From positions 4,340,001-4,404,000 of the forward strand of contig OU015569.1 of NCBI GenBank assembly GCA_907165135.1: DNA of 64,000 bases, written 5' to 3'. Position numbers and translations under genes: made by a program. The stretch is from Oikopleura dioica (taxonomy: Eukaryota > Animalia > Chordata). Under the pieces are notes generated by a model, which was not told the origin of the DNA, made no database searches, and saw only the letters and a program-made list of their open reading frames with translations. This document shows, piece after piece, positions 16,609-28,056 of the stretch. How positions within the stretch are numbered: the first letter of the stretch is position 1; the number at the start of each line of letters is the position of its first letter.

Positions 16609-18527
16609 ATGTCCGTCGATGCCACGAAGCGGCCTTTGAAGATGCCGATCAGGTATCAGAACTACGCGGAAGAGCACGAGATATTCGAAATGGTCGGCAA
16701 CATGATGGAATCGCTCCTTCTAAATCGACCTAAAGATCCACTGAGCTACTTGATCAGTTACTTGGAGGGCGACAATAGAAGGAAGGTCACAGTTGCCGTG
16801 TTGGGGCCGCCAGGCGCTGGTAAAACCTGCATTGCACAGCAGCTCGCCCATATCACCGGCGTCCCGATCGTCTCAAAGTTGCAGCAGCTTCAGAACAACG
16901 ATCCGCGTTATCGTTATGGATACATTTTGGACGGCGTTGCGGAATCGTCCGAGGACGTCATCGCTCTTCAAGAGGCTGGATGCATTCTCGATTACGTGAT
17001 CTATCTTCATGGGCCCGAAGACTTATTGCGCTCTCGACAAAAGGACAAGTGGACTGACCCTGTCACCGGCACAGTTTATCATCCTGTCTTCAACTGGCCG
17101 TCCGATGAAGTTATCGCCAACAAGCTCATCAAACTTCCCGAAAAGCCCTTCGCCGAAGAATATTCCTGCCACCAAGTCAAGAAAGACAGAGTTTTACAGA
17201 CCTACAATCACATTCTGGCGCGGTTAAGTAATTCGCATTAGCAGTCAAAATAGAAGAACATTTATGCACTAGAACATACAAAAAACTTCTAACCGTATCA
17301 AAAGCACAAGATCAACTGCGATCAGCCACTCACTGACGTCAAGAAAATTGCCTCAGAAATCGTCTCCCAAAGGCCAATGTCGAAGGCTCGCGTGGTTACG
17401 AAGGCACTTCTCCTTGGCCCCACTGGTTCCGGAAAGAGACTGGTTGCAGAACGCCTTCACAAGATCTGGGGCATGGTACCAATCGGTAAGGATAAAATAT
17501 TATACACCTGTTGAGAAGTCATGAATCATCAAATATTTGATGCGAACATTTAGACTTGAAACTTCTGATTGAGCAGGAAAAATTGAACAAGACCAGGATC
17601 GGCCAAGAAATATTGAGAAACGATGGTATTGTAACGAAACGAGCATTGGAGTATATTCTGAAAGAGTAGGACTTGTTTGCTTACAGCAGCGGTTTTATCA
17701 AATTCTTTAGTCGACTTGAGAGAGAGGACGCAGTGTTAAACGGATGGGTTATTTTTTCGTATCCCGTGGAGTGCATTTACGACCTTGGGGAGGCGATGGC
17801 GTCTACAAATATTCTCCCAAACAGAACTGTTGTTTTCCAAATCAGGTTAGACAATCGAATCGAGCGAGACAACAATATTGTTTCACATGCCACCGATGCT
17901 ATCCTAGAGCCTCGTCAAAATAACTTGTTTATCGGGCTTGATTTTTGATTGATTCAATAACCAATTATGAAAGTCAAAAATATTTCCCATGCAGTCTACT
18001 GCTTAGAAATTGATAGATTCTCGAGCATGCAAGAAACGATGTTGCTTACTACAAGCGTTTTATTAATAATATGATGGTCGTCGACTATTAGTCGACAAAC
18101 AAAATTTGAAGAGTGTTTTAGCGAAAACTCAATAATCGAGCGACTGGCGAACAGAATGGTCGACTCTTTGACAGGCAGAGAGTATCATGCCTTGTACAAT
18201 CCAGCAACGGCTGAGAATATTCGAAACCGACTTGTCAAGAGGTAATGCCCAAAAAAAATCCCGTCTTAAAAATGAATCAAGAGAAATGGATGACTCGGCA
18301 AGTGTCAAAAAGAGAGTAAACGACTTCAATAACCAGCTGCCCGACATCCTCGACGTACTCAACGACACCGATCCCCAAATGATCAATGCCGACCAGGTAA
18401 TTGCTCACCGCCTCTTCCCCAGCTAAAGGATTTGCTCCTTTAGGATCAGAACGTCGTGTACCAATTGGTGGAATCCAAACTTGCCAAGCCTCTACCTTCA
18501 AAAAGTTTCGACGGTTACGCCGACTGA
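16609..18527 (+). CDS. AK8: Adenylate kinase 8 (docking domain plus two AK domains)
   Basis: MSVDATKRPLKMP..NYAEEHEIFEMVGNMMESLLLNRPKDPL..VLGPPGAGKT; second P-loop LLLGPTGSGKR; ends ADQ|DQNVVYQLVESKLAKPLP..*. Confidence 0.9.
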
Positions 18528-24952: not shown

Positions 24953-25401
24953 ATGAACTCGAAACTCGCTTCGGTAGAAAACCTCTGGCAAGTGAAAGAA
25001 CAAGTCAAAAATGTAGAAATGATCGCGGAAGAAGTTCTAAGCCTCAAAAATCAAGTGCTCGCGCTCAATAAGCAAAAAGATCAAGCTAGATTAGCTTGGC
25101 GCGCCCTGCAGAAGACCAACGATCAAACCGTCTGGCTGAACTTCGGTAAGGCGTCTTTTATAAGGACATTCAAGCTAATTCTGGCAAAGGTGCGCCATTT
25201 ATACAGTATGAGGCGGGTGACGCGGAAGATATGCTAAAGTCTGATATGAAGATCATCGAAACCAGCATAAATGAGACACGCGAGGCGCTGAAAAAAGCTG
25301 CCGATCGTCTAGAAAAGGCACAGGGATCTGACAAAGTAGCTGCATTCAGTCATCTCCAAGCAATATCAGCGTCGGATGTCCGCGATTTTCTCAAAAAGTG
25401 A
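24953..25401 (+). CDS. PDRG1: p53 and DNA damage-regulated protein 1 (prefoldin-like), 2 exons
   Basis: VKNVEMIAEEVLSLKNQVLALNKQKDQARLAWRALQK..VWLNF|GAPFIQ..AEDMLKSDMKIIETSINETREALKKAADRLEKAQG matches the recalled PDRG1 pattern. Confidence 0.85.
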
Positions 25402-25514
25402 CCGTCTTGAGAAGAAATATATTTCTAATGTACATTCTTTTGACTGCCAATTAATAACAGATGAATGAATATTTGGGCAACTCTAAGAAAGATTCTGTTT
25501 TAGTATGCTGTCGA

Positions 25515-26314
25515 ATGTCTACTATTAGTTTATTTCAATTTTCGGCCCTCGTTCTGTGGCCTCTTCTCTTTTCTGTATGCACCTTGATATGGTCGGAGAG
25601 ACAATCAAAATCGATAGAATATCTCATAAGGGTAATAAAGGCACTCTTACGAGCTTGATAAGAATACAGTATTCAGGCGAAATCTTCGCTGCGGGTTCTC
25701 GAGCGAGATCTGACCTTTGAACATGAAACGGCTCATCGCTTGCAGGATTTGAACAAGGAGCTTCGCTCCGAAGCGAGGCACCACTCGCACTCCCTCCGCC
25801 AGATCAAGCAAGGCCAGCGCGCCAAGGTAAACCGGTTCCCCTCCTTCAACTCTTTGCTTATTGGATACTCTAGTTCTTGCGTCTCAAGGGAATTCCAGAG
25901 GAAGGCCAGGGAAATGAAAATACGGCGGAAAAGGATAGTTTGGATATGTTATTAAAAATATTAAATGCTTTCAAGTGCGTTTTTTATTTGTTAAACTTTC
26001 GGCAGTCCAGGCATTTTCAAACTAAATGAAAAGGTTTCCGAGCTTCTGGAATACTTGGGCTTTGAAATCGAAGCTTCGGACATCGAGCGTGCGAACAGAG
26101 TTGGCGGGCGTGACCACGAAGGACCTCGTGCGATCGTCATGGAGCTCACTTCCGAACGACTCAAACATGCAATCTTGGGCGAAGCTGCCGTCAAGCTGCG
26201 CCACACGCCCTATTCCATTCTTGGTAAGCGTATTGAACTGGGATATTTGCGCGACCGAACTCTACGGGAGAACTTGTTTGCCCCAATCAACGACAAATAG
26301 AGCTGCTTAAATAA
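25515..26314 (+). CDS. Intron-containing gene with hydrophobic N-terminus, coiled coil and LINE-1 ORF1p-type RRM (putative domesticated retroelement ORF1)
   Basis: Exons 25515-25631, 25677-25826, 25874-25933, 26034-~26223 (stop at 26300 or 26314): ..QGQRAK|FLRLKGIPEEGQGNENTAEK|VSELLEYLGFEIEASDIERANRVGGRDHEGPRAIVMELTSERLKHAILGEAAVKLRHTPYSI. Confidence 0.75.
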
Positions 26315-26528
26315 GTTTATCAATGATAGTGTTAACGGTTGATAATATCTTTGTATAGGACTTTTATTGACCTCATTTTTTGTCAATATTTTGCATATCA
26401 CTCGCAACTCATTGATGAACTTTTCTTTGTTTACGAAATTAACGATGGTAACATCATAGCTACATAGAATAGACTATTATTAATAGTCTATTAATGATCT
26501 ATTTAGACTCTATTATGAATTTAATAAT

Positions 26529-28056
26529 GTGGTTTTAGTAAAAACCTTTAACGGTAAATATATAGACGACGAAACTTTTGTTGTGATGGAGGAAAGTCAA
26601 GCTATGTATGTTCCGGATATGGGAATCGGTTGCGGTCTTATCAGTCACGTAGAAGATCCTGAGCTTGTGAAGAAGTCAGGTAGAATGTTTGGCTTCTGGG
26701 GAACAGATTCGCAGATCAATTCAGAACGTGTTTATATCATGGAACATTTTTACAAGAACGCGAAAGGCGAGGGGCCTCTCTGTTCAAATATTGAAAGTAT
26801 ACAATCACAACGCCTAAGCATTATGCGGGTTTTTATTTAGTTACCTATAAGCTTCTATTTTTACGAAAAAAACGAGAGTTTACCCCGGCAAAAGTTATCC
26901 AGTTCGAGAATATCCACGAGTTTCGGCAGCCGACGGCAAAACCTAAAGTGTTCACAATGCCTTATAACTGGGGTGGGACGGGGCATTTGGTTATAAATGA
27001 CTGTATCTACTTCAATCGCTTCAACACGTCCAATATTGTCCAGGTAATATTTTGATATCATAGTTTAACAATAGCATCTACCATAATAATGCATGCTCAA
27101 TAGCGAGTATTATTATTTTATACTGTAGTGTCGTATCTAGTGCCCATCAATCTTATCCTGACACTACATCGCTTTGATTGCATCATGGTGCTATGCACCC
27201 CGATGCGCACCGTGAGGTAGCTAACCCATTTTAACTGCTCCCCATCTTTACACTGAAACACATTAGAACAGATTTAACTTCCATAACAACACATTCCTTC
27301 ACACAAAGACAAAGCACGACCAATAAACGAGATATGACATTTTAGTCCATTTTGGGGCCTTGTGTCCATTCATCTATTGGAGGACATTTGATGAGACCCT
27401 AACAATATAAACAATGCAAGTAAGCATACCTTCAGTACTCAACGACAGAGAAAAAGATCGTTAACGAAGTGGAAGTGCGTGACGCCGCCTTTGGAAACAT
27501 GGCGCCGTATCAGTGGGCAGGCAGCACTGATTTCGACTTGAGTTACGACGAGTGCGGCTTATGGCTTATATATGCGACGCTACAAAACTCGCTAGACATA
27601 GGTCTGTCTGATCGCGCTCTACTGTTAAGCTGTAACGCGTTTTCAGTTATTTCGAAGCTGAATATGGACACGCTCGAGATCGAGACAACGCACAGAACTA
27701 ACTGGCGTAAACAGTGGTCTGGCAATGCATTCATGGCCTGTGGCGTGCTCTATGTCTTGAAGAAATACGATGAAAAATATACCTCCCTGAATTACATCTA
27801 CAATACCCACACAGGTATGACCTCAGAAAGAGAGAGATCTACTTTTCACTTTCGCATGCCAAGTTGAAAAATAAGCTCAGAGGTATTGATTTTTTACTTT
27901 TAAGACACGTACAAATACGTTGACATTCCGTTCACGAACAAGTTTGAATGGAACACCATGGTCGATTACAACCCTCGGGACAAGCGAATTTATGCTTGGG
28001 ATAAGGGGCACCAGCTAATTTACAACTTGACCATGGAGTCATCGGACGCACTATAA
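26529..28056 (+). CDS. Olfactomedin-domain protein (noelin/myocilin-like propeller); 5' end uncertain
   Basis: CGLISHVEDPELVKKSGRMFGFW..; MPYNWGGTGHLVINDCIYFNRF; YQWAGSTDFDLSYDECGLWLIYAT; SGNAFMACGVLYV; MVDYNPRDKRIYAWDKGHQLIYNL*. Confidence 0.9.

What the first reader, a model, noticed from the sequence alone, without database searches (positions are those of the whole stretch)
25515..26314. Intron-bearing host gene built from a LINE-1 ORF1p-like coiled-coil + RRM, with an N-terminal membrane/signal segment
Seen in sequence: splicing four exons gives a hydrophobic N-terminus (LFQFSALVLWPLLFSVCTLIW), a 50-aa coiled coil, then QRAKFLRLKGIPEEGQGNENTAEKVSELLEYLGFEIEASDIERANRVGGRDHEGPRAIVMELTSERLKHAILGEAAVKLRHTPYSI. 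Established: this follows the L1/Tx1-type ORF1p RRM signature (RRNNLRIxGIPE..ENTEEKV..DIERAHRxG..PRxIIVKF..KxxIL..A.KL..ISI). There is no ORF2, reverse transcriptase, poly(A) tail or TSD nearby. The gene has three introns and sits 113 nt behind PDRG1 with an AG acceptor, like an operon member. Inference: a domesticated retrotransposon ORF1 independent of mammalian L1TD1. A membrane-anchored or secreted RNA-chaperone-type fold would be an unusual architecture and could serve in RNA localisation or anti-retroelement defence.
Basis: partly seen in the sequence, partly recalled or inferred. Interest (0 to 1): 0.78.

Follow-up and report, generated by a model that had tools for sequence, protein, structure and literature searches.

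The report
Retrotransposon ORF1p domain inside tunicate olfactomedin
The four exons are real, but they are only the front end of a nine-exon Oikopleura gene for a cell-surface olfactomedin protein whose stalk (coiled coil plus RRM domain) descends from the ORF1 protein of a LINE retrotransposon, a build shared with sea squirts.

Summary
The resemblance to the LINE ORF1p RRM is true homology: a profile of six paralogous domains hits solved L1 ORF1p chains first (E 4e-6). An AlphaFold model (pLDDT 87) has L1 ORF1p as its top matches with two independent aligners.

The gene does not end at 26301. That stop lies in intron 4. Exon 4 splices at 26223 to 26566, and five more exons encode an olfactomedin (OLF) domain. 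The product has 450 aa, ends at 28056, and is identical exon by exon to the annotated O. dioica protein OKI2018_I69 g14507. A fully spliced, spliced-leader-capped environmental mRNA of the orthologue shows every junction.

The build is hydrophobic anchor, coiled coil, ORF1p-type RRM, then OLF. It recurs at five loci in this genome; a sixth lacks OLF. It also occurs in Ciona, Styela and Clavelina "noelin-like" proteins, but in none of about 100 vertebrate olfactomedins tested.

This is an old host gene under strong purifying selection (pN about 0.05, pS saturated), not an active element. Its RRM is acidic, so RNA binding is doubtful. I infer an oligomerising extracellular stalk.

I found no paper describing it. 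This scan had already noted the same build at three paralogous loci of this genome.

The parts
25502..25503 (+). Predicted spliced-leader trans-splice acceptor (ttttAG)
   Evidence: The sequence is. The orthologous mRNA L015 starts with the 23-nt 3' end of the spliced leader, joined 5 nt upstream of the homologous position. That leader has 53 exact genomic copies and 0 for the control pattern, and in its own gene it is followed by a GTGAGA donor. The acceptor in this lineage is predicted, not observed.
25505..25528 (+). Seven-codon upstream ORF overlapping the start codon (MLSNVYY*)
   Evidence: Read. The orthologue L015 has the same layout (MKSNVNN*). Function was not tested.
25515..25631 (+). 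Coding exon 1: start codon and hydrophobic anchor or signal segment (aa 1-39)
   Evidence: 39 of 39 residues identical to P0162. There is an uncharged run of 27 aa, and the best 19-aa Kyte-Doolittle window scores 1.91. AF2 predicts a helix from residue 4.
25677..25826 (+). Coding exon 2: coiled-coil stalk (aa 40-89)
   Evidence: AF2 predicts one continuous helix over residues 4-86 with pLDDT above 88.
25874..25933 (+). Coding exon 3: first strand and loop of the ORF1p-type RRM (aa 90-109). It is followed by a 100-nt GA-AG intron.
   Evidence: The intron is absent from the sister-lineage genomic contig L014, and the junction is spliced in L015.
26034..26223 (+). Coding exon 4: remainder of the ORF1p-type RRM (aa 110-172 plus the first base of codon 173)
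   Evidence: Profile A1 against the PDB puts L1 ORF1p first. AF2 gives a b-a-b-b-a-b fold. Foldseek and VIA-align both rank L1 ORF1p first.
26224..26565 (+). Intron 4 (GT-AG, 342 nt).
   Evidence: The donor is G|GTAAGC. L015 and P0162 read PYSIL|DDETF across this junction.
26566..26766 (+). Coding exon 5: linker and start of the OLF domain. It is followed by a GC-AG intron.
   Evidence: 66 of 66 whole codons identical to P0162. Pfam OLF covers positions 198-444 of P0162.
26895..27043 (+). Coding exon 6: OLF domain
27436..27601 (+). Coding exon 7: OLF domain
   Evidence: Pfam OLF scores E 1.9e-27 on window:27469-27864.
27647..27814 (+). Coding exon 8: OLF domain
27905..28056 (+). Coding exon 9: end of the OLF domain and the TAA stop at 28054-28056

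Best explanation
Window 25515-28056 (+) is one nine-exon Oikopleura dioica gene, and the orthologue's mRNA is SL-trans-spliced. It encodes a 450-aa olfactomedin-family protein with four parts. Residues about 4-26 form an N-terminal hydrophobic segment, most likely a type II signal anchor or possibly an uncleaved or cleaved signal peptide. A long coiled-coil helix runs to residue 86. Residues 89-172 form a b-a-b-b-a-b RRM homologous to the RRM of LINE (non-LTR retrotransposon) ORF1p. After a short linker, residues 198-444 form a C-terminal OLF beta-propeller.

The RRM, and probably the whole coiled coil plus RRM module, was captured from a retrotransposon ORF1. The capture took place in or before the common ancestor of appendicularians and ascidians. 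The module has been kept under purifying selection as part of a host extracellular protein and was multiplied to six loci in this genome.

Inferred mechanism: the ORF1p-derived coiled coil oligomerises the protein, as it trimerises ORF1p. The RRM forms a rigid base or spacer that presents several OLF propellers at the cell surface or in the matrix, much as the collagen stalk does in gliomedin. Nucleic-acid binding has probably been lost, because the domain has become neutral to acidic.

Shown: gene structure, domain composition, homology, fold, paralogue and ascidian distribution, and selection. Inferred: topology, oligomeric state, loss of RNA binding, and direction and date of capture.
For: Gene structure:
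- Each of the nine exon translations is 100% identical to consecutive stretches of P0162 (NCBI O. dioica OKI2018_I69 XSR g14507, 450 aa).
- L015 is an intron-less, spliced-leader-capped orthologous mRNA with one 450-aa ORF.
- The OLF domain scores 5.2e-73 in Pfam.

Homology of the RRM:
- Profile A1, built from six paralogous domains, hits human L1 ORF1p chains first in the PDB: 2w7a at E 4.1e-6 over profile positions 5-81, 2ykp/2yko at 7-8e-6, and 2ldy (listed as 'ORF1 codes for a 40 kDa product') at 2.2e-5.
- The same profile finds 5601 proteins at E<=1e-3 among 1.84 billion representatives. Most are 200-300-aa coiled coil plus RRM proteins at E about 1e-15.
- Some of those carry Transposase_22, Baculo_FP_2nd or an APE endonuclease fragment.

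Fold:
- The AF2 domain model has pLDDT 87.
- The Foldseek top 11 are all L1 ORF1p (best E 6.3e-5, TM 0.70, 23% identity), and generic RRMs appear only from E 3e-3.
- In VIA-align against 48,161 chains, the only three with Z>=8 are L1 ORF1p (Z 9.7, 9.0, 8.9).
- The full-length AF2 model has pLDDT 93, with a helix at 4-86, the RRM at 90-173 and the propeller at 197-445.

Distribution:
- The genome has six loci, and no free ORF1-like copy was found.
- Five loci have OLF exons downstream on the same strand.
- The RRM is found in 17 of 122 OLF proteins. All 17 are tunicate (Oikopleura, Ciona x2, Styela, Clavelina) or unnamed environmental sequences. None of about 100 vertebrate noelin, myocilin or OLFML2 proteins has it.
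- 21 OLF-linked RRMs form one clade with SH-aLRT 99, and monophyly of all 24 is not rejected (AU p 0.22).

Selection: against L015, pN is 0.048 in the RRM with pS about 0.69, which is saturated.

Topology:
- Every member has an uncharged run of 19-27 aa.
- In P0166 and P0174 that run is internal, after 39 and 147 charged residues, so it cannot be a cleaved N-terminal signal there.

Charge: the median net charge of the RRM is +1 in OLF-linked proteins (-5 in the window gene) against +8 in ORF1-like proteins.
Against: - Pfam's own Transposase_22 model does not reach its cut-off on any of these proteins. The best score is 14.4 bits against a cut-off of 22.4 on a paralogue, and the window exons score nothing.
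- No transcript from this exact lineage was available. The spliced mRNA evidence comes from about 80%-identical (nucleotide) sister lineages.
- Homology of the coiled coil itself cannot be tested.
- Three divergent Oikopleura paralogue rows fall outside the supported clade.
- Absence outside tunicates rests only on the best 120 OLF hits and the best 150 RRM hits.
- Topology, oligomeric state and loss of RNA binding are inferred, not measured.
Confidence: 0.8

Rival explanations
1. One reading: a small stand-alone gene (25515-26303) encoding only a membrane anchor, a coiled coil and an ORF1p-like RRM, acting on RNA in localisation or anti-retroelement defence.
For: The frame stays open from 26034 to a stop at 26301, so retention of intron 4 would give such a product. 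One paralogue (C2:1.166 Mb) and its environmental orthologues P0017 and P0154 really do end just after the RRM, and no OLF lies within 7.6 kb.
Against: The donor G|GTAAGC sits at 26223/26224. The orthologous mRNAs L015 and L016 and the public protein P0162 all splice PYSIL|DDETF into the OLF exons. Conservation between paralogues stops at that donor. The RRM of this gene is acidic, with net charge -5. OLF proteins are extracellular.
Confidence: 0.07
2. The domain is an ordinary RRM or ferredoxin-like fold that resembles ORF1p only by convergence, so no retrotransposon was involved.
For: Pfam Transposase_22 stays below its cut-off. Generic RRMs also match the model at Z 6.5-8. The same profile gives a chance-like hit to an SNF2/ISWI helicase motif at E 3.7e-5.
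Against: In sequence searches the only full-length PDB matches are ORF1p. Hundreds of coiled coil plus RRM proteins match at E 1e-11 to 1e-15 across the whole domain, sharing the RRNxxRxxGxPE, DIxRxHRxG and PRxIIVKF motifs. Both structural aligners put ORF1p first, at 19-24% identity against 4-19% for other RRMs. The coiled coil abuts the RRM exactly as it does in ORF1p.
Confidence: 0.05
3. Same gene and same origin, but the captured module still binds nucleic acid or another polyanion outside the cell, so the protein would be an extracellular RNA- or glycan-binding olfactomedin rather than a passive stalk.
For: The RRM is under purifying selection as strong as that on the OLF domain. Several residues are invariant across tunicates: R92, G95, E98, R141 and K153. 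Ascidian and some Oikopleura members remain basic, at net +2 to +6.
Against: The window gene and its closest relatives are acidic, at -5 to -2. The C-terminal domain that carries key RNA-binding residues in L1 ORF1p (established knowledge from Khazina et al. 2011; not tested here) is absent.
Confidence: 0.15

Closest known systems
LINE-1 ORF1p (type II ORF1p: coiled coil, RRM, C-terminal domain; PDB 2w7a, 2ykp, 2ldy; Pfam PF02994 Transposase_22)
   Same: The RRM is homologous in sequence profile and is the best structural match. The RRM follows directly on a long coiled coil. The conserved motifs GxPE, DIxRAxRxG and PRxIV are shared.
   Different: There is no C-terminal dsRBD-like domain and no ORF2. 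The sequence is not multicopy, carries introns, is not basic, is preceded by a membrane or signal segment, and is fused to an OLF propeller. It falls below Pfam's cut-off for PF02994.
Domesticated or fused L1 ORF1p genes of vertebrates: L1TD1 (PMC4161310) and Lyosin (ORF1p-MYL4), L1-RFX5, NUP42-L1, USP4-L1 (Kitao et al. 2025, PMC12129022)
   Same: A LINE ORF1p coiled coil plus RRM is kept as part of a host protein under purifying selection. As in the 2025 cases, the ORF1p part is joined to an unrelated host domain.
   Different: Those cases are all vertebrate and intracellular, and the fusions are alternative first or last exons. Here the module is constitutive and split by introns. It is shared by appendicularians and ascidians, lies in the extracellular part of a membrane or secreted protein, and has expanded into a gene family.
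Olfactomedin family: noelins (OLFM1-3), myocilin, and gliomedin (type II membrane protein with a collagen stalk and OLF)
   Same: There is a C-terminal OLF propeller (PF02191, 246 bits). The N-terminal signal or anchor plus an oligomerising stalk follows the general family plan, and the type II anchor plus stalk plus OLF layout parallels gliomedin. Ascidian orthologues are auto-named noelin-2-like or noelin-3-like.
   Different: The Noelin-1 domain (PF12308) is absent and there is no collagen. The stalk contains an RRM that none of about 100 vertebrate olfactomedins tested possess.

Membership tests
LINE ORF1p (Pfam PF02994 Transposase_22) | Match to the family HMM above its gathering score (22.4 bits) | tested here: not met
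   The window exons, L015, P0162 and the ascidian proteins give no hit. Paralogue L002 scores 14.4 bits at E 0.048. A whole-genome scan finds nothing significant.
LINE ORF1p (Pfam PF02994 Transposase_22) | Sequence homology of the RRM to solved ORF1p | tested here: met
   Profile A1 hits 2w7a at E 4.1e-6 across profile positions 5-81, followed by 2ykp, 2yko and 2ldy. Hundreds of ORF1-like proteins match at E down to 1e-15.
LINE ORF1p (Pfam PF02994 Transposase_22) | b-a-b-b-a-b RRM fold closest to the ORF1p RRM, preceded by a coiled coil | tested here: met
   AF2 models have pLDDT 87 and 93. The Foldseek top 11 are all L1 ORF1p. The VIA-align top 3 are L1 ORF1p at Z 8.9-9.7. A helix spans residues 4-86 before the RRM.
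LINE ORF1p (Pfam PF02994 Transposase_22) | C-terminal dsRBD-like domain after the RRM | tested here: not met
   The RRM ends at residue 173, a linker of about 25 aa follows, and OLF begins at 198. There was no Tnp_22_dsRBD hit.
LINE ORF1p (Pfam PF02994 Transposase_22) | Part of a retrotransposon: adjacent ORF2 (endonuclease or RT), many copies, no introns | tested here: not met
   The genome has six loci, all intron-bearing and five of them OLF-linked. ORFs of at least 110 aa between window positions 17000 and 37000 (about 8.5 kb upstream and 9 kb downstream of the gene) show no RT or endonuclease. The gene is spliced and SL-capped.
LINE ORF1p (Pfam PF02994 Transposase_22) | Basic, nucleic-acid-binding RRM | tested here: not met
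   Net charge is -5 and pI 5.2 in the window gene. ORF1-like relatives have a median of +8. Binding itself cannot be tested with these tools.
Olfactomedin (OLF) domain proteins | PF02191 above its gathering score (23.9 bits) | tested here: met
   P0162 scores 246 bits at E 5.2e-73 over residues 198-444. Window exon 27469-27864 scores E 1.9e-27.
Olfactomedin (OLF) domain proteins | Secretory-pathway entry (signal or anchor) and an N-terminal coiled coil | tested here: inconclusive
   A hydrophobic run of 19-27 aa is present in all members, and it is internal in two of them. A long helix is predicted. No signal-peptide or topology predictor was available.
Noelin subfamily (the name given to the ascidian orthologues) | Noelin-1 N-terminal domain (PF12308) | tested here: not met
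   PF12308 is absent from P0162, P0175, P0167, P0168 and P0013, but it is present in the vertebrate noelins listed.

The most novel reading that the evidence does not exclude
Tunicates carry the first known non-vertebrate and first extracellular exaptation of a LINE ORF1p. An ORF1 coiled coil plus RRM module was captured before appendicularians and ascidians split. It now serves as the oligomerising stalk of a cell-surface olfactomedin family, with one Oikopleura member reduced to the anchored ORF1p-like module alone. The capture may still bind a polyanionic ligand outside the cell.
Probability: 0.5. Interest if true: 0.72.

Novelty: new variant of a known kind. Interest (0 to 1): 0.6.

Why it matters
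Host genes built from LINE ORF1p are very rare. The literature I could search names L1TD1 and, since 2025, four vertebrate fusion isoforms, all of them intracellular.

A tunicate-wide olfactomedin family whose stalk is an ORF1p coiled coil plus RRM would extend this kind of domestication in three ways. It would reach invertebrate chordates. It would be much older. It would also place the module in an extracellular protein, where RNA chaperoning cannot be the selected function. That points to the oligomerising scaffold of ORF1p as the reusable part.

The finding also corrects database names: the ascidian proteins are labelled noelin-like although they lack the noelin N-terminal domain. It supplies a testable case for how retrotransposon proteins are rebuilt into matrix or cell-surface proteins.

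For this particular window the result is also a correction.

Tried and rejected
Searches that found nothing:
- Pfam and PDB sequence searches of the single window exons.
- PF02994 against the whole genome.
- A word-based search with the Clavelina stalk region, which found only the query itself.

I therefore could not check the genomic context of the ORF1-like relatives or the origin of P0002.

Tree test redone: the first AU test rejected a single clade of OLF-linked RRMs (p 0.0005). It was invalid, because two truncated proteins that do contain OLF starts (P0117 and P0062) had been labelled non-OLF. With the labels corrected, p is 0.22.

Chance hit set aside: the profile's hit to ISWI/SNF2 chains is a short DxxRAHRxGQ-like motif. 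I rejected it because the predicted fold is an RRM.

Upstream gene: Pfam and PDB searches did not identify it as PDRG1.

Upstream ATG: the in-frame ATG at 25461 is rejected as the start. It is not conserved, the orthologue has a stop there, and it lies upstream of the predicted SL acceptor at 25502-25503.

Joined step left out: I did not concatenate the window's exons into a spliced protein for any search. The exons were used one by one by reference. Whole-protein work used natural uninterrupted references, namely the mRNA ORF L015:40-1389 and the database protein P0162.

Full report
**Observation.**
- Exons 25515-25631, 25677-25826, 25874-25933 and 26034 onwards are all in phase 0 and give exactly the peptides quoted.
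- The donors are GT, GT and a non-canonical GA. All acceptors are AG.
- The upstream gene's stop (25399-25401) is 113 nt before the ATG, and a ttttAG acceptor lies at 25502-25503.
- Taken exon by exon, Pfam and PDB sequence searches found nothing, and the Pfam L1 ORF1p model finds nothing significant anywhere in the 64-Mb genome.

**The gene is longer than reported.**
- Searching the genome with exon 4 found paralogues.
- Reading them showed that an olfactomedin (OLF) domain follows on the same strand in most of them. In two loci (L004, L013) it lies in the same open frame as the RRM-like segment.
- In the window the same holds: window:27469-27864 matches Pfam OLF at E 1.9e-27.
- Exon 4 carries a perfect donor, G|GTAAGC, at 26223/26224. 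Paralogues L002 and L003 have 40-47-nt introns at the same place.

**Transcript evidence.**
- A scan of JGI metagenome contigs with the fragment P0002 returned L015, a 1758-nt contig with a single uninterrupted 450-aa ORF.
- L015's first 23 nt are the 3' end of the Oikopleura spliced leader. That 23-mer occurs 53 times in this genome (0 for the control pattern) and is followed in its gene by a GTGAGA donor.
- L015 is therefore a mature, trans-spliced mRNA of the orthologue in a sister lineage, with about 95% amino-acid and about 80% nucleotide identity.
This means 26223 is joined to 26566, so the stop at 26301 is intronic.
- L016 is a second spliced mRNA of a 74%-identical relative.
- L014 is a genomic contig that lacks intron 3 precisely.

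**Final exon table.**

| Exon | Coordinates | Note |
|---|---|---|
| 1 | 25515-25631 | start codon |
| 2 | 25677-25826 | |
| 3 | 25874-25933 | followed by GA-AG intron |
| 4 | 26034-26223 | |
| 5 | 26566-26766 | followed by GC-AG intron |
| 6 | 26895-27043 | |
| 7 | 27436-27601 | |
| 8 | 27647-27814 | |
| 9 | 27905-28056 | TAA stop |

Each exon translation is 100% identical to consecutive parts of P0162, the annotated O. dioica protein OKI2018_I69 XSR g14507 (450 aa). Whole-protein work used L015's natural ORF and P0162.

**What the middle domain is.**
- Sequence profile against solved structures:
  - An alignment of the six paralogous domains (A1) was searched as a profile against PDB sequences.
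  - It hits human LINE-1 ORF1p first: 2w7a at E 4.1e-6 over almost the whole domain, then 2ykp and 2yko, and then 2ldy.
- Profile against protein representatives:
  - Against 1.84 billion representatives the same profile finds 5601 proteins at E<=1e-3.
  - After Oikopleura fragments and tunicate OLF proteins, the list is filled by 200-300-aa proteins with an N-terminal coiled coil and this domain (E about 1e-15).
  - Their consensus motifs are RRNxxRxxGIPE, DIxRxHRVG, PRxIIVKF and IxEDLT.
  - Pfam marks some of them as Transposase_22, Baculo_FP_2nd or as holding an APE endonuclease piece.
- Structure:
  - An AlphaFold2 model of the domain (pLDDT 87) has b-a-b-b-a-b topology.
  - The Foldseek top 11 PDB chains are all L1 ORF1p (best E 6.3e-5, TM 0.70, 22-24% identity), and generic RRMs start at E 3e-3.
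  - VIA-align against 48,161 representative chains, which is independent of Foldseek, gives only three chains with Z>=8. All three are L1 ORF1p, at Z 9.7, 9.0 and 8.9.
- Pfam's PF02994 stays below its cut-off (best 14.4 bits). The domain is thus a distant relative of the mammalian L1 model, not a formal member of it.

**Whole protein.**
- The full-length model of P0162 has pLDDT 93 and pTM 0.81. It shows one helix over residues 4-86, the RRM at 90-173 and the OLF propeller at 197-445.
- Every family member has an uncharged run of 19-27 aa.
- In P0166 and P0174 that run follows 39 and 147 charged residues, so there it must be a signal anchor with the N-terminus inside. In the window gene only three residues precede it.
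- No topology predictor was available, so anchor versus cleaved signal remains open.

**Distribution and history.**
- The genome holds exactly six significant loci with this RRM and no free ORF1-like copy. Five have OLF exons downstream.
- The sixth (C2:1.166 Mb) stops right after the RRM and has no OLF within 7.6 kb. Its environmental orthologues P0017 and P0154 end at the same place.
- Among the best 120 relatives of the Clavelina protein, a local hmmsearch finds the RRM in 17 of 122 proteins.
  - The named ones are O. dioica (2), Ciona intestinalis, C. savignyi, Styela clava and Clavelina lepadiformis.
  - The others are unnamed environmental sequences, one of which carries a translated Oikopleura leader.
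  - None of about 100 vertebrate noelin, myocilin or OLFML2 proteins has it.
- In a tree of 117 RRM domains, 21 OLF-linked ones form a clade with SH-aLRT 99. The three rows from the L004 and L008 loci are unresolved. A single clade of all 24 is not rejected (AU p 0.22). A first test with two mislabelled rows was discarded.
- Against L015, pN is 0.048 in the RRM, 0.066 in the anchor plus coil and 0.071 in OLF. pS is about 0.7 and saturated, so dN/dS is below about 0.04.
- Intron positions differ between paralogues, so they are old duplicates and not retrocopies.

**Function.**
- OLF proteins act outside the cell (established knowledge), so an RNA-chaperone role is unlikely.
- The RRM has lost the basic character of ORF1p. 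The median net charge is +1 in OLF-linked domains, -5 (pI 5.2) in the window gene, and +8 in 125 ORF1-like relatives. These sequences are related to one another, so the Mann-Whitney p value overstates independence.
- The C-terminal domain of ORF1p is absent.
- I infer that what was kept is the scaffold: a coiled coil that oligomerises, and an RRM that caps it and spaces the OLF heads. This is comparable to the collagen stalk of gliomedin. None of this was measured.

**Literature.** Full-text searches found no paper linking olfactomedin with ORF1p, and none on this domain in tunicates. The known ORF1p-derived host proteins are:
- L1TD1 (PMC4161310);
- Lyosin, L1-RFX5, NUP42-L1 and USP4-L1 (PMC12129022).

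All of these are vertebrate and intracellular.

**Earlier notes of this scan.** After reaching the reading above, I found three notes on other pieces of the same genome that describe the same build at paralogous loci. They agree with this report.

Noticed in passing
L008:1303-2013 (-) / L021 (G000:C2:1158000-1167600): One paralogue encodes only the anchor, the coiled coil and the ORF1p-type RRM. It stops just after the last RRM strand (..SPYMVKDAL*), and no OLF exon lies within 7.6 kb downstream. Environmental orthologues (P0017; P0154, 199 aa) end at the same point.
   Followed up: partly
window 25505-25528: A seven-codon upstream ORF (MLSNVYY*) overlaps the main start codon. The orthologous mRNA L015 has the same arrangement (MKSNVNN*), which suggests a conserved translational control element.
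   Followed up: no
window 26468-26515 (inside intron 4): There is a perfect palindrome with 12-nt arms (AATAGACTATTA / TAATAGTCTATT), followed by three 16-nt repeats spaced 11 nt apart. Its meaning is unknown.
   Followed up: no
L018:1485-1530 and 53 genomic sites: Spliced-leader RNA genes: the full 40-nt leader is followed by a GTGAGA donor. Copies often lie in inverted pairs 0.4-2 kb apart on contigs C1, C2, C4 and C5.
   Followed up: partly
Pfam and PDB sequence searches gave no support for or against that name.
   Followed up: partly
P0174 (environmental, 668 aa): This family member has a 147-residue Arg/Ser/Lys-rich N-terminal tail before the hydrophobic segment, which argues for a type II membrane topology with a sizeable cytoplasmic domain.
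   Followed up: no
Profile A1 positions 40-85 versus PDB 5jxt_B, 5jxr_A, 6pwf_K: The RRM motif DIERANRVG...PRAIVVEL...K..L..A..KL mimics the SNF2/ISWI helicase motif (DxxRAHRIGQ..V.V.R), giving E 3.7e-5. The fold shows this is a chance look-alike.
   Followed up: yes
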